In this document: one piece after another, positions 5,952 through 17,153 of the stretch
Position numbering within the stretch: position 1 is the stretch's first letter
Layout: each line of letters opens with the position of its first letter
Virus record (IMG/VR): IMGVR_UViG_3300050821_013430
Location: 1 to 64,000 of that record
Strand: one strand, 5' to 3'
Length of the DNA stretch: 64,000 nt
The notes under the pieces: generated by a model
Seen by the model: the letters and a program-made list of their open reading frames with translations, nothing else
Databases searched by the model: none
What the model was told of the DNA's origin: nothing
Program-made: the position numbers and the translations under genes

Positions 5952-6685
5952 TTTGACTTTCTTATATCTTCACCAATGATTGGAAAGATTTCGAGATAAC
6001 CGCTCATCAGTGATTGAACACTTTCTTTTAGAGGCCCTGAAAACGATTCAATTACATTAGGACTATTACTTGCCATTAATGTAGGTAATTTGTTTTGACT
6101 TCGAGTACGAAAAATACTTTCTAATGTTCGAGCATATAAGTCAGCAGCAGTACTAGATGGCAAGAAACGAGGATCAAATTCATCGATCGTCAAGTAATCT
6201 ACCATAACCAATTCACGACGAGCAATAAATTTGTCATCAGACTGAACTAATACATTGACCGCATCAGAAAGCGTTGTATATAGCGCTGTAAAACCTTTCT
6301 GTACTGCTTTTTTAAGTACGCAGGTGAGAGTCATCGTTTTTCCTGTCCCGTGATTACCAGCAAAACATACCGAAGTGCCATTTAGATAAGTGGTTTTGAT
6401 ATCTTTAGTTAGTCCTTGATATTTTTCCATCAAACCCGGAAATCCCCTAAAATCTTTTTTCATTCGAAGCTCCCAATATTCGATAGGGATATTGCTTTCA
6501 TAATACCTATTATAGGCAATATGCTGCACGGAACATTTCTGACATAACCCATCAAAATTACCATCCAATGATAATTCTTTGAGAGAACATTCAGGACAGG
6601 TCTTGACTACTGAAAATAATTTCTCCTGCAGTTTTTTGATAGGTAAATTATTTAGTGCCGGGCTTCTTGAAAAAGTGTGATTCAT
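5948..6685 (-). CDS. DnaC/IstB-like AAA+ helicase loader
   Basis: N-terminal CxxC...CxxC, Walker A GNHGTGKT, Walker B LTIDEF, R...LPTLMASN; adjacent to DnaB. Confidence 0.82.
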   Translation of the reverse strand: MNHTFSRSPALNNLPIKKLQEKLFSVVKTCPECSLKELSLDGNFDGLCQKCSVQHIAYNRYYESNIPIEYWELRMKKDFRGFPGLMEKYQGLTKDIKTTYLNGTSVCFAGNHGTGKTMTLTCVLKKAVQKGFTALYTTLSDAVNVLVQSDDKFIARRELVMVDYLTIDEFDPRFLPSSTAADLYARTLESIFRTRSQNKLPTLMASNSPNVIESFSGPLKESVQSLMSGYLEIFPIIGEDIRKSK

Positions 6686-7058
6686 ATCTTACTGGCCTTA
6701 CTTCGGTGAGGGTATGCGATTTGAGTTTTTCGCCGATGATCTTTTTATCTTGCTGATCGAGTTCTTTTCTCAGATCAGCAAGTTTCTTTAGACGCAGACC
6801 ATCGCGACTAGGTTCTAAATAAGTTTCGTCAAAACTCTCTGCTAATTCTTCTTTTTCTTCTTCCAATTCTTCAATGGTAGGAGCAGTGGTAATTTTGATT
6901 AGCATTACATCTTCTAATGTCTTAGTGATAATCATCTTACCACTTCCATCTTCGAGAAGAAGAACGCTTTCTTTTTCTGACCAACTCTCTACAATACCAT
7001 CTACTTGAATAGAATTTCTAAGAACTACTTTGACCCTATCATCTTTTTTGATTAGCAT
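6648..7058 (-). CDS. Hypothetical protein with N-terminal Sm/Hfq-like barrel and C-terminal coiled coil
   Basis: RVKVVLRNSIQVDGIVESWSEKESVLL resembles the Hfq Sm1 strand pattern. Confidence 0.5.
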   Translation of the reverse strand: MLIKKDDRVKVVLRNSIQVDGIVESWSEKESVLLLEDGSGKMIITKTLEDVMLIKITTAPTIEELEEEKEELAESFDETYLEPSRDGLRLKKLADLRKELDQQDKKIIGEKLKSHTLTEVRPVRYESHFFKKPGTK

Positions 7059-9140: not shown

Positions 9141-9929
9141 TTAGCGAGAGAAAAGGTTCTTAAAAACCCCGGTAATTATACTAACAATAAAATTGACAAC
9201 ACCATTCGCGGGAGGATTGACCACGGGGGGAGGGACGGGAGCTGGGATAGGGTCTGGCGCCACAGGATCGGGCACAGGAGCGACTTCGGGAGGGGGTGCG
9301 GGGGTAGGCGCTACCATGGGGTCAGGGCCCCATAAACTCAAATCTGCGGCGACATCGGTATCTACGGCAACACCACCAGGTAGTTGTAATGCAGTTCCAC
9401 CCGCCGTTTGCCAAACTACATCAGTTGTCCAGGGAGCGGGAATGGCGGGAGAAGAGGTATAACTAGCAATCCATAATTTGCATTGAGCAGTAAAATCCGC
9501 AGACGTAAAAGCACAGGCTTTTAGGAAACTGGGATAAGAATAGATTAGCATTTGTCTGCCATCTAATTCGCTATATTTTGCTTGATAGCGATTACAGTAA
9601 TCTCGGACTTGTGCGGCAGTCATTCCACGGGCAACCCAGTCCTGAGGGTAGGGATACTCAATATCGCTTGAGGCTAATTCACCGCCTGCTAGAGAGTAGT
9701 GATATGCTGCTATTTGTTCGGGAATATCCCCAACGATCGGATAAAATACGTGATAAGCCATCACCTTGAGCCCAACAGCCTTGGCGCCAGCAACATTTTG
9801 AGTATAATTAGGATCGTGTTGATTTGAACCGATCCCGCATCTAATAACAACGAAGCTTATCCCCTGTTGCACGCACCAGTCCCAGGGAACTACGGATTGG
9901 ATACTACTGACGTCGATTCCTTTATACAT
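9141..9929 (-). CDS. GH25 muramidase (endolysin) with Pro-rich linker and amphipathic C-terminal helix
   Basis: GIDVS, FVVIR, DPNY..N..GA..VGL.V.AYH, DIE, LWIASY, WQ, VDTD. Confidence 0.85.
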   Translation of the reverse strand: MYKGIDVSSIQSVVPWDWCVQQGISFVVIRCGIGSNQHDPNYTQNVAGAKAVGLKVMAYHVFYPIVGDIPEQIAAYHYSLAGGELASSDIEYPYPQDWVARGMTAAQVRDYCNRYQAKYSELDGRQMLIYSYPSFLKACAFTSADFTAQCKLWIASYTSSPAIPAPWTTDVVWQTAGGTALQLPGGVAVDTDVAADLSLWGPDPMVAPTPAPPPEVAPVPDPVAPDPIPAPVPPPVVNPPANGVVNFIVSIITGVFKNLFSR

Positions 9930-9933
9930 CTAC

Positions 9934-10296
9934 TTATTCCTTTTCTTTTTCTATTTCCGGATGCACGATCACCTTGAAATCGGGATCGTTTTTCGCATCC
10001 TTGAAGACTTCGCGCCAAGTTTCCAAGTCTTGAGTCGTAGGTTTGGTAATACCCTCTAATGCCTTCTTGAAATCCTTCAATTCTTGCCTCTGTTTATCCA
10101 ACATTTTATTGGTCATTAATTCTCTGTTTTCTTCCGGAACAACCGAAGCGATGTCTTCCAATCGACTTAGTTTGATATCTACCGCTTCTACCAATAGTTT
10201 GAGAAATCCCTCAAACGAATTAGTATCCATCATCACCATTAGATGATTGAGATGCGGCAGTTGTTCCTGCATTTTGTAAAATGTTTTGTAATCCAT
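9934..10296 (-). CDS. Hypothetical helical protein
   Basis: 120 aa, coupled to the upstream ORF. Confidence 0.6.
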   Translation of the reverse strand: MDYKTFYKMQEQLPHLNHLMVMMDTNSFEGFLKLLVEAVDIKLSRLEDIASVVPEENRELMTNKMLDKQRQELKDFKKALEGITKPTTQDLETWREVFKDAKNDPDFKVIVHPEIEKEKE

Positions 10297-10481
10297 TAGA
10301 CTTCCTTGATGGCCGAAATTGATGCTATATCAATTATGGTTGATTTGGACATACGAGAAGTACAATTGAGAATTACAAAATCAGCCTCTTGAGTTTCTTT
10401 GAGAGTACCCTCAAACCAATGACCATTTATAAAAATATATATTTCTTTGCCGAAATATGTTGATAGTGTTGTGAAATTCAT
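10296..10481 (-). CDS. Small Sm/LSm-like beta-barrel protein
   Basis: LSTYFGKEIYIFINGHWFEGTL...DFVIL...IIDIASISAI. Confidence 0.6.
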   Translation of the reverse strand: MNFTTLSTYFGKEIYIFINGHWFEGTLKETQEADFVILNCTSRMSKSTIIDIASISAIKEV

Positions 10482-10693
10482 TTTGCTACCTCTTCTGCTG
10501 GTGCGTCATCTGCCATCCAAAATCCTACTACCTTGTCTGCATCTACATAGTGTTTGCAAGACTTCTTAGTACTGAGAACCAGGTGGTTTTCTCCGACACT
10601 GACCAGTTTGCCGGTTAGTGCGGCACTGCTGCCCATAACTTGCAAGTTGATTTCCTTACCTTTTAGATTACCGTGAAATAATGTTGTTTGCAT
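10478..10693 (-). CDS. Small Sm/LSm-like beta-barrel protein
   Basis: LKGKEINLQVMGSSAALTGKLVSVGENHLVL...HYVDADKVVGF. Confidence 0.6.
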   Translation of the reverse strand: MQTTLFHGNLKGKEINLQVMGSSAALTGKLVSVGENHLVLSTKKSCKHYVDADKVVGFWMADDAPAEEVAK

Positions 10694-10698
10694 TGTTA

Positions 10699-10932
10699 TT
10701 ATCCTTGTTTAGTTTCATTTAGTTCATAATGATCAATTTGCGATACTCTAATGGCGACCATTATTCCAGCACACCAATCAGCTTTCATCAAAATGGCAGG
10801 TGAGAAGCCACTATCTTCTGCCATACCTAACTCACCTATAACGGCTTCAACATCGCCAATTAGGCAGCTACCATCAAATGTATGAACTCTGAGATTCTTA
10901 CCTTCTAATCCATCGAAATCTTGCTTTTGCAT
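10699..10932 (-). CDS. Small Sm/LSm-like beta-barrel protein
   Basis: LEGKNLRVHTFDGSCLIGDVEAV...AILM...VAIRVSQIDHYE. Confidence 0.55.
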   Translation of the reverse strand: MQKQDFDGLEGKNLRVHTFDGSCLIGDVEAVIGELGMAEDSGFSPAILMKADWCAGIMVAIRVSQIDHYELNETKQG

Positions 10933-11809
10933 TTACTTTCTCCTGTCTTGTTATATGTCTTGTTATATGTCTTGTTCTATTTGAACCTTCAATAATATTA
11001 AGTTTAGCCGAATATGGCCGCAAATTTTCGAGGGCCCAACATTTCTTGAAATTTTCCTCTTTCATATTTTTATATGGTAAATCGGATTGAGGAATGATAT
11101 GATCTAATTGCCAAGTCCAAGTCGAGGAGTCATTATCATCCCAAGTTTTAGCATTATATCGACCGTGATTTTCCCAAGTCATCCAAAAGTTTTTGTCTTT
11201 CCATTGGCTTTCGATATGAAAAGCTAGACTATCAGGAGTCCAATCCACAAAATCAAGAAAAGAATAATTATTTTTGGAAGAGCCTATTTTGTTCAGAGCG
11301 GCATTCACCATTCTTGAAATATTTACCCTGATTTTATATACTGGATCGTTCTTTTTCTTTTCTCTTTGCCATTTATTATAAGATTGTGTAATTTTCTCTC
11401 TATTATCTTCCCTGTATTGTTTTTTATATCGTTTTGTTCGTTCTCTAATTTGTGGCTGCGCGCGATACTTCTTATCTTTTGCAAGAATTTCTTCTTTATT
11501 ATTACTATAATATGTGCGTTTTCTTATACTAATATAGTTATTGTTTTCTTTCCTATATTCTTTATTATATTGATCTATCGATTCCTTATTTTCAGCATAA
11601 TATTCTTTTTTCTGTGTAATAATATTTTCACTGTTATGAGCATAATAATTTCTATTCTTGGCCAAAATAGTTAATTTATTTTTCTTATAGAAGGCCTGTT
11701 GATTTAGTGCAAGACATTCTTTACATTGACCGGTTAGCCTCCCGGTATCAGATCGAATTCTAAATTCACTATTTTCTTTGGTCTCTTTACACTGAATACA
11801 TTGTTTCAC
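10898..11809 (-). CDS. Free-standing HNH homing endonuclease (family copy 1)
   Basis: CxxC...CxxC, basic helical Y/K/E repeats, WTWQLDHIIPQS...KCWALENLRPYSAKLN. Confidence 0.85.
   Translation of the reverse strand: MKQCIQCKETKENSEFRIRSDTGRLTGQCKECLALNQQAFYKKNKLTILAKNRNYYAHNSENIITQKKEYYAENKESIDQYNKEYRKENNNYISIRKRTYYSNNKEEILAKDKKYRAQPQIRERTKRYKKQYREDNREKITQSYNKWQREKKKNDPVYKIRVNISRMVNAALNKIGSSKNNYSFLDFVDWTPDSLAFHIESQWKDKNFWMTWENHGRYNAKTWDDNDSSTWTWQLDHIIPQSDLPYKNMKEENFKKCWALENLRPYSAKLNIIEGSNRTRHITRHITRQEKVNAKARFRWIRR
10944..10976. repeat. 12-bp tandem repeat (tgtcttgttata, about 2.75 copies) in the HNH gene tail
   Basis: Visible directly; encodes TRHITRHITR. Confidence 0.8.
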
Positions 11810-11811
11810 TG

Positions 11812-13173
11812 TTATTTTCTCCGATCTACTACCGTATTCTGTACAAGTTTTCCAAACTGACTAGACTTTTGGGAAATACGATCCTTTATTTTTTGAGCGG
11901 CGGAAACATTTTCTTCGGTACCAGTTTCTAATTTGAGATTTAGATTACGAGTCTCGTCCTTGATTTTGGATTTTTGCACTAGTTCGCGGGCATCCTTTTT
12001 CAATTGATCTATTCTATTATCAGGAAGCGATAGTCCCGAAAACATTGAATATACTTTCACTACATTTTCTGGAATATCAACTTCATAAATTCCCTTGAAC
12101 ACTCCCTTTGGGGATGAACATAAATCATTTACCATTGCCATTGCATAATTTACACTAGAACTTGGAATTTCTTTCCAAACTTTAGCATTAGCTACGATGA
12201 TCGCTCCTACATATTTGGCTTGTTTCAAATCGAAACCACTAGCTAAAAGATTATTATTTAGATTATCAATCACGGCTTTTGCAATTGACACTTCATCCTT
12301 ATAGTCTGGCACTGTTAGCTCACCATAAACACTTAGTCCCTCACCATCGCACAAAAGTCTGGCAAACTCAGTAGGGTCTAATCCTTTTACGCTAGAGGGC
12401 ATTGCCGAAAAAGTATTGAAAACATCTAGTGGCTCTACAATAGTTTTGTTGGCTACTTGGAAAAATTCCATTTGAGAAACGCCACTTAGAATTGTTTCTA
12501 ACTTAGCATTATCAACGACAATAAGATTAGCGATCTTTTTGTCTCGAGCCATTCCTGCAAGCTTTGATAATGTTTCTAATGCATTAGCTTTTGTTTGCGT
12601 ATCATCTGAGTCCATCGGAAGAACCGTCAAAACTACCAGTGGTTTATTGGTTTCAGTAAGAATATCTACTAGAGTTTCACAAGAACCGGCCCCACTTCCA
12701 CCACCGAGCGATAGACACAAAACATTGACCTGAGAACGAAGCAACTTATCATTGATCATTTGCGCAATATCTGAACGGAAAGTCTCTGCAGCGGCTTTAC
12801 CAAATTCTAAATCTTTTGCTGCGCCACCGAGCCCATATTCTAACAATAACTTATTAGAATCTGGCAAATCAAGAAATTTTAGGTCTTGATTGGCGGTATT
12901 GATTGCTATAGCATCATATCCTAATTTAGAAAAGGAAACAGCAAGTCTCCCACCGGCTTGACCGCTTCCCACTACACCTAAGTTTAGACTTCGCTCTTTC
13001 TTTGCTACAATTTTCGCTGACATTCTCTGCTCCATTTGTTTTGCTTGACTTTGGGCCTTTAAGGCCACTAATTTACCGGCATCGACCGACGCAGGTTCGG
13101 AAACCTCAACGGTAGAAATATCATCCACTACTTGCTCTGGTGTGATTTCTTCGGTAATTGATTTTGCTGTCAT
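11812..13173 (-). CDS. Tubulin/FtsZ-family GTPase (PhuZ/TubZ-like)
   Basis: GVVGSGQAGGR (T1), AINTA, GGAAKD, signature SLGGGSGAG, VVDN, T7-like GLDPTEF. Confidence 0.88.
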   Translation of the reverse strand: MTAKSITEEITPEQVVDDISTVEVSEPASVDAGKLVALKAQSQAKQMEQRMSAKIVAKKERSLNLGVVGSGQAGGRLAVSFSKLGYDAIAINTANQDLKFLDLPDSNKLLLEYGLGGAAKDLEFGKAAAETFRSDIAQMINDKLLRSQVNVLCLSLGGGSGAGSCETLVDILTETNKPLVVLTVLPMDSDDTQTKANALETLSKLAGMARDKKIANLIVVDNAKLETILSGVSQMEFFQVANKTIVEPLDVFNTFSAMPSSVKGLDPTEFARLLCDGEGLSVYGELTVPDYKDEVSIAKAVIDNLNNNLLASGFDLKQAKYVGAIIVANAKVWKEIPSSSVNYAMAMVNDLCSSPKGVFKGIYEVDIPENVVKVYSMFSGLSLPDNRIDQLKKDARELVQKSKIKDETRNLNLKLETGTEENVSAAQKIKDRISQKSSQFGKLVQNTVVDRRK

Positions 13174-13184
13174 TTGTTTTCCTT

Positions 13185-13192
13185 TATATCGG
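13185..13192 (-). promoter_or_regulatory. SSGATATA motif (CCGATATA) upstream of the tubulin gene
   Basis: Same motif recurs in 8 intergenic gaps. Confidence 0.55.
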
Positions 13193-13202
13193 TTGAATCA
13201 AT

Positions 13203-15253: not shown

Positions 15254-16018
15254 TCAATCATTTTTCTTTTGATGGCGAGTTCGTCTAATGCCATCTAAAA
15301 TATTTTGTTTTGCGCTCAGTGGGCGAAGATTTTCTAATGCCCAGCATTTCTTAAAATCTTCATCTTCCATTGTTTCGTAGTGAAATTCTGAATGAGGAAT
15401 AATATGATCTATTTGCCAAGTCCAAGTGGAAGGATCATTATCATCCCAGGTTTTAGCATTATATATCCCATGATTTTTAAAATGCATCCAAACGTTCTCA
15501 CCGATCATCTGAGATGCTAAATGATTTAAAAACTCCTGAATTGTATAATCAAGATATTGAATACACGATTCGCCCAATTTAGAGCCACCATTTCTTTTAA
15601 GACCGTAATTAATTGCACTTGACATCAAACATCTAAAAGCGTAAGCAGGATCGTTTTTCTTGCGATCTCTTTCATATTTATTTTTCTGTTCGCGAATAAA
15701 TTCTTTATTTTCCTCTTTATATTTTTTATTATAGATGCTTATAGTTTCTTTATTTTCTTTACGATATTCAGCATATGCTTCTTTATTTTCTTTTTTGTAT
15801 TTTTTCGCGTAAATTTTACGGTCTTCGCTATTTACTTGATAATAATCTTTACCATATTGCCTAATATTTTCTTTATGCTTTTCATAATATTTTTTGTTCT
15901 TGGAATCATGACAATTTTTACAATTGTTTCTATATTTATTTGTATCTTTTCTGAAATAAAATTCATCTAATGATTTATTTAATCCACAAATACAACATTT
16001 TTTAATATTTTCTTGCAT
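15254..16018 (-). CDS. Free-standing HNH homing endonuclease (family copy 2)
   Basis: Start moved to MQENIKKCCICG (ATG 16018) to avoid overlap; WTWQIDHIIPHS...KCWALENLRPLSAKQN. Confidence 0.85.
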   Translation of the reverse strand: MQENIKKCCICGLNKSLDEFYFRKDTNKYRNNCKNCHDSKNKKYYEKHKENIRQYGKDYYQVNSEDRKIYAKKYKKENKEAYAEYRKENKETISIYNKKYKEENKEFIREQKNKYERDRKKNDPAYAFRCLMSSAINYGLKRNGGSKLGESCIQYLDYTIQEFLNHLASQMIGENVWMHFKNHGIYNAKTWDDNDPSTWTWQIDHIIPHSEFHYETMEDEDFKKCWALENLRPLSAKQNILDGIRRTRHQKKND

Positions 16019-16031
16019 TGTATGCCCAAAA

Positions 16032-17153
16032 TTATTCAAACGGAATTTGATCAACAATTTTAGACCAATCATAATGGTCACAGATATTCATTCGTTGTTT
16101 TTCAAGTTCAGCATTCAATAATGAAAAATCTGAATAAGCCTTTCTAAGTTGTTCTATCGCACTTTCCATGTTAGGCATAAACCATTTAGTGCCTCTTTTT
16201 TGTTCCCAATACATACTGGTGGGTTCCGCCTCCACTTCATCACCTTCAATAAGTAATGAGTTATCGGTAGTAAGGAAATCTTTTTGACCGCCATAGTTGG
16301 GACATATATTAACTTTACCGGAAGCGAGACCCTCTAATCCCGGAATATAAAAACACTCTGTATGACTCATAGTAAATACTGCGTCAATACTTCGATATAG
16401 AACAGATATATCATCTATATAATTAGTTATTAACTTTACTTCGGCGTGTTTGGGAAACTGTTTATAAAACGAATTTAAATATTCATTTAAATCTATATCG
16501 AATGTTTGAACGGCTCTTTTAGGTCGTGCCTTTAAAAGTAAACAAACATCATCATCTATTGTAAATGCTTTTCCATAAGCAGTTAATAGTCCAGAAATAT
16601 TTTTTCTCTTATGATTTTGTGCGATATTAGATAGTATTTTAAATTTTTTTTTGGTGGGGAGACTGATAGTCGTGGCTTGTCCAAACTGAGCGCCATTAAT
16701 CCCATGTGAGAGTACTTGCATTTTATTTTTAGGAACACCAGAATTAGCAAATGTTTCCATAGATGATTCAGATGGTGGTAATAATGTATCGCAATATACG
16801 TGCTGTTGAGCAAATCCTGTTGGTAAAGCATTCACTCCGGCCCACTCGTATGACCAAATACCAAAACGATTTTTTTTACTGTGCGAAAGATATCGAGAAA
16901 AATTTTTCATGCAGGTATAACTAATACACGCGTCATAATTAGGGCCCGGCTGATTTCCATACATTTTCCCACTTGGATTACCATCACTATATCCAATTAA
17001 ATATGGCATTAAATCTCGTGGTAAATGATCTATGCCATCGGTAGAGTATAACTTTACATCATGTTGTTTTTTAAGTAGGGCGCGGGCCATTTCTCTACCG
17101 ATCACTCCCCAACTATGATTGGCTCCTAAAAATTGTCTAATTAATATTTTCAT
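16032..17153 (-). CDS. GT-B glycosyltransferase (GT4-like)
   Basis: HKRKNI, SHTECFYIPGLEGLASG (Ex7E), NYGGQKDF, YDW at the C-terminus. Confidence 0.82.
   Translation of the reverse strand: MKILIRQFLGANHSWGVIGREMARALLKKQHDVKLYSTDGIDHLPRDLMPYLIGYSDGNPSGKMYGNQPGPNYDACISYTCMKNFSRYLSHSKKNRFGIWSYEWAGVNALPTGFAQQHVYCDTLLPPSESSMETFANSGVPKNKMQVLSHGINGAQFGQATTISLPTKKKFKILSNIAQNHKRKNISGLLTAYGKAFTIDDDVCLLLKARPKRAVQTFDIDLNEYLNSFYKQFPKHAEVKLITNYIDDISVLYRSIDAVFTMSHTECFYIPGLEGLASGKVNICPNYGGQKDFLTTDNSLLIEGDEVEAEPTSMYWEQKRGTKWFMPNMESAIEQLRKAYSDFSLLNAELEKQRMNICDHYDWSKIVDQIPFE

What the first reader, a model, noticed from the sequence alone, without database searches (positions are those of the whole stretch)
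10296..10932. Three tandem divergent Sm/LSm-like miniproteins
Seen: three closely spaced 61-77 aa ORFs share the pattern helix-GK-x-(I/L)-x-(I/L/V)...G-x-(L/V)...hydrophobic strand...(I/V)xxxx(I/V). This is the strand order of Sm/Hfq barrels, yet the three are very different from one another. They lack the Hfq YKHA and Sm RG RNA-binding signatures. Inference: a phage-encoded heteromeric Sm-like ring for RNA chaperoning, host Hfq interference or a protein scaffold. Bacteria normally use homo-oligomeric Hfq, so a heteromeric ring would be unusual.
Basis: inference. Interest (0 to 1): 0.7.

Follow-up and report, generated by a model that had tools for sequence, protein, structure and literature searches.

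The report
Small Sm-fold proteins beside megaphage tubulin
Three tiny neighbouring genes in a 473-kb soil phage are real and at least two encode Hfq/Sm-shaped barrels of the uncharacterised DUF6897 family, but related phages carry one, two or three of them, so a fixed three-part ring is unlikely.

Summary
Three co-directional minus-strand ORFs lie at the stated coordinates: A 10296-10481, B 10478-10693 and C 10699-10932. Each has a Shine-Dalgarno site, gene-like codon usage and the shared GK-x-(I/L)-x-(I/L/V) pattern. None has significant pairwise BLASTP similarity to another.

- **B** is a Pfam DUF6897 member (28.1 bits, cut-off 23.9). Its AlphaFold2 model (pLDDT 87.8) is a helix plus five strands and superposes on Hfq at 1.2 Å over 54 residues (Z 8.8). 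It is under strong purifying selection (dN/dS 0.08).
- **A** is a fast-evolving, divergent paralogue of the same family.
- **C** has no relative in three protein searches. Only an ESM Atlas model (pTM 0.60) suggests an Sm-like barrel.

The trio is not conserved. Relatives have B alone, B+A, B plus a second B-type copy plus A, or B plus a DUF2158 miniprotein. A B3A3 complex prediction gave no answer (score 0.00). B sits directly after a TubZ-like tubulin gene in six related lineages, but in another phage clade it sits beside unrelated genes. The family is mostly acidic and lacks the Hfq and Sm RNA-binding motifs.

Verdict: new members of a known kind. The Sm fold is supported; the heteromeric ring and an RNA-chaperone role are not shown.

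The parts
10478..10693 (-). B, 71 aa: the conserved core. A DUF6897-family Sm-fold miniprotein with an acidic C-terminal tail.
   Evidence: Pfam PF21838 28.1 bits against a cut-off of 23.9. 37 representative relatives in 1.84 billion proteins, 20 of 38 aligned members hitting DUF6897. AF2 pLDDT 87.8, H3-6 then five strands. Hfq rmsd 1.2-1.4 Å over 54 aa, VIA Z 8.8. dN/dS 0.08 against L001.
10296..10481 (-). A, 61 aa: a divergent, fast-evolving paralogue of the B family. Its ATG overlaps the stop of B (ATGA).
   Evidence: DUF6897 E 0.0049 at 17 bits, below the cut-off. MM0924_fam E 0.0054. hhalign A3 vs A2 E 2.2e-4 over 53 columns. tblastn to P0012 in L012, 34% identity, E 2.9e-4. Groups with P0035/P0038 in the family tree. 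dN/dS 0.64. Orthologues only in L001 and the P0002 contig.
10699..10932 (-). C, 77 aa, net charge -7: a gene without relatives that may encode an Sm-like barrel with an insertion between strands 2 and 3.
   Evidence: Only itself found among 5.8 billion proteins. No Pfam hit. Atlas model pTM 0.60 with LSM/Hfq/ROF/DUF3247/RimP_C neighbours at TM 0.63-0.75. AF2 single-sequence pLDDT 52.8. N-terminal 19-28 residues weakly like B. Codon-usage score 0.34, best of six frames.
9934..10296 (-). 120-aa protein with no Pfam or PHROG family hit. Its start overlaps the stop of A (TAATG). It is conserved downstream of B/A in relatives.
   Evidence: Homologues in L001 (68% identity) and L002-4 (47%). No Pfam or PHROG family. 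dN/dS 0.12. A 224-nt metatranscriptome contig spans 10099-10322 across the A/120-aa junction.
10898..11809 (-). 303-aa HNH-type endonuclease gene inserted between the tubulin gene and C. Its last 35 nt overlap the start of C.
   Evidence: phrog_2340 'endonuclease' E 1.2e-11. Absent at this position in L001, L002, L006 and the P0002 contig. A 206-nt stretch (10986-11191) recurs at 76% identity at 15291-15496.
11812..13173 (-). 453-aa TubZ-like tubulin gene, the conserved upstream neighbour of B.
   Evidence: PF00091 Tubulin 46.9 bits and PF22453 TubZ-like_C 26.4 bits. A tubulin homologue is followed directly by a B-family gene in L002-4, L006, L012 and the P0002 contig. In L001 it is followed, after a 108-aa ORF, by two B-family genes.

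Best explanation
**What it is.** The region is a short run of small beta-barrel (Sm-fold) miniprotein genes in the early/replication part of a 473-kb soil megaphage. It lies in a variable slot between a TubZ-like tubulin gene and a UvsW-type helicase gene.

- **B** is the conserved, strongly constrained member. It belongs to a branch of Pfam DUF6897 whose members I found only on phage-like contigs. The branch has an N-terminal helix, five strands, conserved glycine-rich 1-2 and T-R-W-S-x-K 3-4 loops, an S-F-W strand 5 and an acidic D-K-P tail.
- **A** is a diverged paralogue that some lineages have and others lack.
- **C** is a lineage-specific addition, probably of similar fold. Other lineages fill the same slot with a second B copy, a DUF2158 miniprotein, or nothing.

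**How it most likely works (inferred).**
- C, B, A and the following 120-aa gene are expressed from one transcript. B to A to the 120-aa gene are translationally coupled through overlapping stop and start codons.
- Each barrel acts as a separate binding module, not as a fixed subunit of a three-part ring.
- B probably self-associates by the usual Sm strand-4/strand-5 edge pairing. It probably binds a conserved phage or nucleic-acid ligand through its conserved loop face.

**Shown and not shown.** The genes, the fold of B, the family links and the variable gene content are shown. The oligomeric state, the ligand and the function are inferred.
For: - **Genes are real:** Shine-Dalgarno sites and overlapping stops and starts; codon usage; third-position-biased substitutions and dN/dS 0.08 for B.
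- **Fold of B:** (Pfam; AF2 pLDDT 87.8; Hfq/Sm/LSm neighbours, Z up to 8.8, rmsd 1.2 Å over 54 residues; Atlas neighbours DUF6897/DUF2642).
- **A in the same family:**
- **Family size and motifs:**
- **Variable content of the slot:**
  - L001: tubulin, 108 aa, a B-type paralogue, 70 aa, B, A, 100 aa.
  - L002-4: tubulin, DUF2158, B, 93 aa, with no A or C.
  - P0002 contig: tubulin, B, A.
  - L006 and L012: tubulin, then B only.
  - L005: a tubulin of 52% identity with no B at all.
- **C has no relatives:**
- **No further paralogues in the genome:**
Against: - No oligomeric state or ligand was established. The only complex job (B3A3) returned 'no answer'.
- The fold of C is supported only by a medium-confidence ESM model, and my AF2 model failed.
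- The tight coupling of B to A to the 120-aa gene would also fit a stoichiometric complex among those three.
- The shared GK-x-h-x-h motif in all three ORFs shows relatedness or a shared fold. It does not show independence of function.
- Co-transcription is inferred from spacing. The single metatranscriptome contig may derive from DNA.
Confidence: 0.6

Rival explanations
1. One reading: A, B and C assemble into one heteromeric Sm-like ring that chaperones RNA or interferes with host Hfq.
For: All three share the N-terminal GK-x-h-x-h...G-x-h pattern. They are adjacent and tightly spaced. B has an Hfq-like fold. Hetero-rings of this kind exist: Lsm2-8 and Lsm1-7 are among the structural neighbours, and MnxE3F3 is a bacterial case (PMC5622069).
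Against: C has no relatives. A is missing in L002-4, L006 and L012, and the number of barrels varies from 1 to 3 between close relatives. B3A3 scored 0.00, which the tool reports as uninformative. A, C and most family members are acidic. The YKHA and RG motifs are absent, and there is no hit to the Hfq or LSM Pfam models at E <= 10.
Confidence: 0.07
2. B, possibly with A and the 120-aa protein, is a dedicated partner of the phage TubZ-like tubulin: an adaptor, nucleator or regulator. This would parallel the way TubR and TubY serve TubZ on plasmids and in Clostridium phage c-st (from my own knowledge of those systems).
For: A B-family gene lies directly downstream of the tubulin gene, on the same strand, in six lineages whose tubulins are 61-78% identical to the window's. 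The junction is 0-3 nt in L002-4, L006 and the P0002 contig. B is as constrained as the tubulin (dN/dS 0.08 for both).
Against: B-family genes in another phage clade sit in a different conserved context, with no tubulin gene in the stretches fetched: TopoI, S21, 204 aa, 216-301 aa, B, MT-A70, HNH (L007-L011). L005 has the tubulin but no B. Adjacency within one clade may be inherited synteny only. No interaction test was run.
Confidence: 0.12
3. The miniproteins are independent host-takeover or counter-defence factors in a hypervariable accessory slot. Each small barrel targets a different host protein, and tandem duplication and rapid divergence are driven by conflict with the host.
For: The slot turns over quickly: C, a B paralogue, DUF2158 or nothing at one position, with HNH and GIY-YIG/NUMOD3 endonuclease insertions nearby. 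A evolves fast (dN/dS 0.64; 22 non-synonymous against 7 synonymous codon changes). C has no relatives. Small acidic proteins are common among phage inhibitors (my own knowledge).
Against: B is strongly conserved and widespread among these phages, which is unlike a fast arms-race gene. I did not scan the three against PADLOC, which in any case holds defence-system proteins, not phage counter-defence proteins. The host is unknown.
Confidence: 0.18

Closest known systems
Pfam DUF6897 (PF21838) / NCBIfam MM0924 family
   Same: B scores above the Pfam gathering threshold, and 20 of 38 family members hit it. A hits it below threshold. Length is similar (about 60-70 aa) and the Atlas neighbours have Sm-like models.
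   Different: The branch found here has its own conserved T-R-W-S-x-K and S-F-W-C-x-E-D-K-P motifs and an acidic tail. Its members were found only on phage-like contigs. B scores 25.1 bits against NCBIfam MM0924_fam, cut-off 45. No paper in the searched library mentions DUF6897, so no function can be transferred.
Hfq (bacterial and archaeal homo-hexameric RNA chaperone)
   Same: Same fold: an N-terminal helix plus five bent strands. Rmsd 1.2-1.4 Å over 54 residues, Z 8.8 to M. jannaschii Hfq.
   Different: 10-15% identity. No hit to the Hfq Pfam model. No YKHA motif. Neutral to acidic proteins. Ring formation and RNA binding are not shown.
Eukaryotic and archaeal Sm/LSm rings (e.g. Lsm2-8, Lsm1-7, SmAP)
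   Same: Structural neighbours at Z 7.7-8.2. Several different paralogues are encoded together, as in the eukaryotic hetero-heptamers.
   Different: No LSM Pfam hit and no Sm2 RG motif. The paralogue set is not conserved between close relatives. Hetero-assembly is not supported.
MnxE/MnxF of the Bacillus Mnx manganese oxidase (E3F3 alternating hexamer)
   Same: Small barrel subunits; chain 9bxa_E is a Foldseek neighbour of B (TM 0.60). Two adjacent, dissimilar small genes form a hetero-hexamer (PMC5622069).
   Different: No sequence relation was detected. Mnx subunits bind copper and dock onto a multicopper oxidase, and there is no such enzyme here. B3A3 was not predicted.
T4 GoF / MotB.1 / Frd.2 LSm-like fold family (Kim et al. 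[quoted passage not shown]
   Same: Several LSm-like early proteins with mutually unrecognisable sequences in one large phage. AlphaFold3 likewise gave no confident homomultimers for the T4 proteins.
   Different: The T4 proteins are about twice as long, with C-terminal domains, and their nearest neighbours are FeoA-type SH3 domains. A and B hit no PHROG family at E <= 10, so no membership is shown.
DUF2642 / GerQ spore-coat Sm-like proteins
   Same: The GerQ filament entry 8zra_A is a top Foldseek neighbour. 2 of 38 family members hit DUF2642, and Atlas feature neighbours carry it.
   Different: GerQ carries the barrel as one domain of a longer coat protein that forms filaments. The context here is a phage, with no link to sporulation.

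Membership tests
Pfam DUF6897 (PF21838) | Whole-protein HMM score at or above the gathering score (23.9 bits) | tested here: met
   B: 28.1 bits, E 1.7e-6, covering profile positions 9-57 of 58. This holds for B only.
Pfam DUF6897 (PF21838) | The same threshold applied to A and C | tested here: not met
   A: 17.0 bits, E 0.0049. C: no hit at E <= 10. A is linked to the family indirectly. C is not.
NCBIfam MM0924 family (NF041655) | Score at or above the curated cut-off (45 bits) | tested here: not met
   B 25.1 bits, A 16.3 bits, C none.
Sm/LSm fold (structural class) | N-terminal helix followed by a strongly bent five-stranded antiparallel sheet that superposes on solved Sm/Hfq chains | tested here: met
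   B: H3-6, E14-19, E25-33, E37-41, E48-51, E55-60 at pLDDT 87.8. Nearly all of the top 50 VIA matches are Hfq/Sm/LSm/SmAP, Z 7.7-8.8.
Sm/LSm fold (structural class) | The same fold for C | tested here: inconclusive
   The Atlas ESM model (pTM 0.60, pLDDT 0.70) has LSM/Hfq/ROF/DUF3247 neighbours at TM 0.63-0.75. AF2 single-sequence pLDDT was 52.8.
Sm/LSm fold (structural class) | The same fold for A | not tested
The fold is inferred from homology to B's family. In the complex run, chain A had pLDDT 71-72.
Hfq (PF17209) | HMM match to the Hfq family | tested here: not met
   No Hfq hit for A, B or C at E <= 10.
Hfq (PF17209) | Sm2 motif Y-K-H-A lining the proximal uridine pocket | tested here: not met
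   Absent from all three translations. B has K47-H48-Y49 in strand 4, which is a different motif.
Hfq / Sm rings | Assembly into a closed hexameric or heptameric ring | tested here: inconclusive
   B3A3 prediction: ipSAE 0.00, ipTM* 0.09-0.13, verdict 'no answer'.
Eukaryotic/archaeal Sm-LSm (PF01423) | HMM match, and the Sm2 (I/L)-R-G motif | tested here: not met
   No LSM hit. No RG dipeptide in A, B or C.
RNA chaperone function (works like Hfq) | Binds RNA | not testable with these tools
   Indirect evidence only. Net charges are A -2, B 0, C -7, and the family is mostly acidic. No Rfam RNA is found in the window.
T4 GoF/MotB.1/Frd.2 LSm-like family | Sequence-profile membership in a phage protein family | tested here: not met
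   A and B hit no PHROG at E <= 10. C has only a weak hit to phrog_6992 (function unknown) at E 0.015. Which PHROGs hold the T4 proteins was not checked.

The most novel reading that the evidence does not exclude
B, with A where present and possibly lineage-specific extras such as C, forms a phage-encoded hetero-oligomeric Sm-like ring in the manner of MnxE3F3. This ring works with the megaphage's TubZ-like tubulin, for example as the adaptor linking filaments to phage DNA or RNA. That would explain why the B gene sits directly after the tubulin gene in six lineages and is coupled to the next genes through overlapping stop and start codons.
Probability: 0.07. Interest if true: 0.65.

Novelty: new member of a known kind. 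Interest (0 to 1): 0.3.

Why it matters
Sm-fold miniproteins look like a recurring but uncharacterised item in large phage genomes. T4 has three (PMC12152347), and this soil megaphage has at least two. The B branch is conserved and strongly constrained across uncultivated huge phages, so it probably does something important. Its repeated position just after a phage tubulin gene gives a concrete, testable lead for a tubulin accessory factor.

As a report on the original claim, the main value is corrective. The fold call was right. The three-part ring is not supported by comparative genomics, and no evidence points to RNA chaperoning.

Tried and rejected
- **Direct pairwise comparison of A, B and C.** Nothing significant by BLASTP or with shallow profiles. 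Only the 38-sequence profile linked A to B.
- **PDB sequence search with the B profile.** Only chance hits to protein G, E about 1.
- **GenBank phages.** No match by blastn for the region or by tblastn for B, C or the tubulin.
- **IMG/VR and metagenome pattern scans.**
  - The IMG/VR scans with the B alignments found no relatives.
  - The full family alignment was too diverse to give a search pattern.
  - The JGI metagenome scan found one locus, L009.
- **Own-genome search with the Pfam model.** It reported 0 matches even for B, so I searched for paralogues with phmmer and hmmsearch on six-frame ORFs instead. None were found.
- **AF2 on C without an alignment.** pLDDT 52.8, discarded and not used for fold search.
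- **Complex prediction B3A3.** No answer. I do not count it for or against.
- **Literature.** No paper in the searched library mentions DUF6897, and one irrelevant paper mentions DUF2642.
- **Rfam on the whole window.** Nothing.
- **Promoter and terminator scan.** No terminator-like site within the cluster. One terminator-like site lies inside the tubulin ORF. The promoter-like hits are not informative.
- **PHROG search of neighbours of B in the second gene context.** No functional clue apart from endonucleases.
- **Rejected: C is a spurious ORF.** Its codon usage, Shine-Dalgarno site and spacing argue that it is a gene.
- **Rejected: the trio is an obligate unit.** See the gene-content comparison across relatives.
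Full report
**Where the window lies.** The window is the first 64 kb of a 472,749-bp virus record. It has 45% G+C. The stretch 9900-13200 is held whole by one soil metagenome run and in part by another. Neither this stretch nor its tubulin has any relative among 50,697 GenBank phage records. It is therefore an uncultivated huge phage.

**The genes.**
- Read on the coding strand, C starts 8 nt after AGGAG and ends 5 nt before the ATG of B.
- The TGA of B overlaps the ATG of A (ATGA). The TAA of A overlaps the ATG of the next gene, a 120-aa protein at 9934-10296 (TAATG).
- A codon-usage log-odds score trained on the genome's 127 long ORFs is highest in the annotated frame for all three (A 0.19, B 0.25, C 0.34). 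All three fall within the range of genuine genes (5th percentile 0.03, median 0.22).
- Compared with the orthologue in L001, B changes mostly at third codon positions (26 of 42 differences). Its dN/dS is 0.08, the same as the neighbouring tubulin.
- A is much less constrained (dN/dS 0.64).
- One 224-nt contig from a soil metatranscriptome matches 10099-10322 exactly, across the junction of A and the 120-aa gene. DNA carry-over cannot be excluded.

**The shared pattern.**
- All three carry G-K-x-(I/L)-x-(I/L/V), followed 8-10 residues later by G-x-(L/V).
- A slightly loosened regex hits six times in the six-frame translation of the whole genome (2.35 expected from shuffles). Three of the six hits are these adjacent ORFs.
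- The pattern was derived from these sequences, so this is supportive and not an independent test.
- Pairwise BLASTP sees nothing except B against C at E 0.044.

**What B is.**
- B hits Pfam DUF6897 above its gathering score (28.1 against 23.9 bits). It hits NCBIfam MM0924_fam below that model's cut-off.
- A word-indexed search found only three close relatives.
- An exhaustive profile search of 1.84 billion representatives found 37 at E <= 1e-3. Nearly all are 61-75 aa.
- The 38-row alignment (A3) shows:
  - a nearly invariant Gly in strand 2 and Ser in the 3-4 loop;
  - a glycine-rich 1-2 loop;
  - a T-R-W-S-x-K-Q-Y-F segment and an S-F-W-C strand;
  - a D/E-D-K-P acidic tail.
- Twenty of the 38 hit DUF6897 and two hit DUF2642.
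- AlphaFold2 on this alignment gives pLDDT 87.8, with a short helix and five strands.
- Foldseek against the PDB returns Hfq chains at rmsd 1.2-1.4 Å over 54 residues. It also returns GerQ filaments, Lsm2-8, a chain of the Mnx complex and RimP.
- VIA-align gives Z 8.8 to M. jannaschii Hfq, and a top-50 list made almost wholly of Hfq/Sm/LSm/SmAP chains.
- The E-values are modest, as expected for a 60-residue barrel. Z near 8 is only just above what the tool's notes call common. The uniformity of the hits and the near-complete coverage still make the Sm-type small barrel a safe call.
- Viral and AlphaFold-DB neighbours are nearly all uncharacterised.

**What A is.**
- A and its orthologue P0006 hit DUF6897 at E 0.004-0.005. 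A hits MM0924_fam at E 0.005.
- Atlas feature neighbours are DUF6897 clusters.
- The deep B-family profile aligns to the A profile over 53 columns at E 2.2e-4.
- tblastn of A hits B-family member P0012 directly (34% identity, E 2.9e-4).
- In a maximum-likelihood tree the A group joins P0035/P0038 inside the family with support 96/89. The tree has few columns and many unresolved forks.
- A is therefore a divergent paralogue of B.

**What C is.**
- C found only itself among 5.8 billion proteins. It has no match in GenBank phages, no Pfam hit and only a weak PHROG hit.
- Profiles align only its first 19-28 residues to B (E 0.02-0.03).
- The ESM Atlas holds a model of it (pTM 0.60, pLDDT 0.70). 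That model's neighbours are LSM-domain, Hfq, ROF, DUF3247 and RimP C-terminal barrels at TM 0.63-0.75.
- My own single-sequence AF2 model was too poor to use (pLDDT 52.8).
- An Sm-like barrel with an insertion after strand 2 is plausible but not established.

**Comparative gene content.** This is the main argument against a fixed three-part ring. I fetched loci around B relatives and around the tubulin.
- L001 (a 286-kb contig; tubulin 78% identical): tubulin, 108 aa, a 69-aa B-type paralogue (about 40% identical to B), a 70-aa ORF, B, A, then the homologue of the 120-aa protein.
- L002-L004 (tubulin 71-74% identical): tubulin, a 64-aa DUF2158 protein, B, then the homologue of the 120-aa protein. 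There is no A and no C.
- The P0002 contig: tubulin, B, A.
- L006 (63%) and L012 (62%): tubulin followed by B only.
- L005 (52%): tubulin followed directly by the helicase gene, with no B.

Close relatives therefore carry one to three barrels, and the slot occupied by C holds different proteins or nothing. In the window, a 303-aa HNH-type endonuclease gene (phrog_2340) has been inserted between the tubulin gene and C.

A second clade of phage-like contigs carries B-family genes in a different conserved context: topoisomerase I, ribosomal protein S21, two unknown genes, B, an MT-A70 methylase, then HNH. The tubulin link is therefore not universal.

**Ring formation.** It scored ipSAE 0.00 (ipTM* 0.09-0.13). 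The tool's verdict is 'no answer', so I count it neither way.

**RNA chaperone?**
- None of the three has the Hfq YKHA or Sm RG motifs, and none hits the Hfq or LSM models.
- Net charges are 0 (B), -2 (A) and -7 (C). Most family members have pI 4.4-6.
- This does not exclude RNA binding by a local basic patch; the conserved R/K-W-S-x-K loop is a candidate. It does argue against a general Hfq-like chaperone, above all for C.

**Comparison with what is known.**
- B is a member of Pfam DUF6897, a family not mentioned in any paper of the searched library. A is a divergent relative.
- The situation most resembles T4. There, three early proteins with unrecognisable mutual similarity share an LSm-like N-terminal fold, and AlphaFold3 likewise gave no confident multimers (PMC12152347).
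- That paper also cites an Sm-like crystal structure of putative cyanophage origin.
- A bacterial hetero-hexamer of small barrel subunits already exists in MnxE3F3 (PMC5622069).

**Verdict.**
- The fold inference is right for B and, by homology, for A. It is plausible for C.
- The heteromeric three-part ring is not supported and is made unlikely by gene-content variation.
- The function is unknown.
- My best-supported reading is separate small Sm-fold binding modules. B is the conserved one and sits in a variable slot downstream of the phage tubulin gene.

Noticed in passing
window 6648-7058 (-): A 136-aa ORF between the 203-aa gene and the DnaC-like and DnaB genes. Its first ~57 residues show the same alternating-hydrophobic, G-containing small-barrel pattern, followed by an acidic tail. 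Orthologues lie in L006 (43% identity) and L005 (29%). There is no profile link to the B family and no PHROG hit. It may be a fourth small barrel in the replication module.
   Followed up: partly
window 10898-11809 (-) and 15254-16081 (-): The 303-aa ORF is an HNH-type endonuclease (phrog_2340, E 1.2e-11). It is absent at this spot in relatives. A 206-nt stretch (10986-11191) recurs at 76% identity at 15291-15496, inside the 275-aa ORF, so there seem to be two related mobile endonuclease genes. L002-4 carry a GIY-YIG/NUMOD3 endonuclease nearby instead.
   Followed up: partly
window 11812-13173 (-): A TubZ-like tubulin (Tubulin GTPase plus TubZ-like_C domains) in a 473-kb soil phage. It has no tblastn match in 50,697 GenBank phage records. 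Relatives of 52-78% identity occur only on metagenomic contigs.
   Followed up: partly
window 10296-10481 (-) vs L001 4216-4392: A has an oddly low synonymous divergence (dS 0.39), while all neighbouring genes have dS 1.2-2.1 in the same genome pair. Possible causes are recent exchange of this segment, a nucleotide-level constraint, or noise from only 59 codons.
   Followed up: no
window 9141-9929 (-): A GH25 lysozyme-family gene with a proline-rich linker and a hydrophobic C-terminal segment. Its orientation relative to the flanking genes is inverted in L001 and L006, another sign that this stretch rearranges.
   Followed up: no
window 9934-10296 (-): The 120-aa protein whose start overlaps the stop of A gives a sub-threshold NCBIfam hit to PRK04017.1-1 'hypothetical protein' (25.1 bits, cut-off 120, E 1.1e-5). 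It has no other family hit.
   Followed up: no
G000:C1 273673-274047 (-) and 315725-316585 (-), outside the window: Two further ORFs in the genome match the loosened GK-x-h-x-h...G-x-h regex. They might contain Sm-like domains or be chance hits. phmmer and the B-family HMM did not pick them up.
   Followed up: no
L002 3804-3998, L003 493-687, L004 438-632: In these relatives the slot between the tubulin gene and B holds a 64-aa DUF2158 (PF09926) miniprotein (E 1.2e-7). This is a different small-protein family at the position of C.
   Followed up: partly
window 17163-61272 (-): A run of very large minus-strand ORFs (1097, 2443, 1368, 1602, 936 and 1930 aa). I did not examine them.
   Followed up: no
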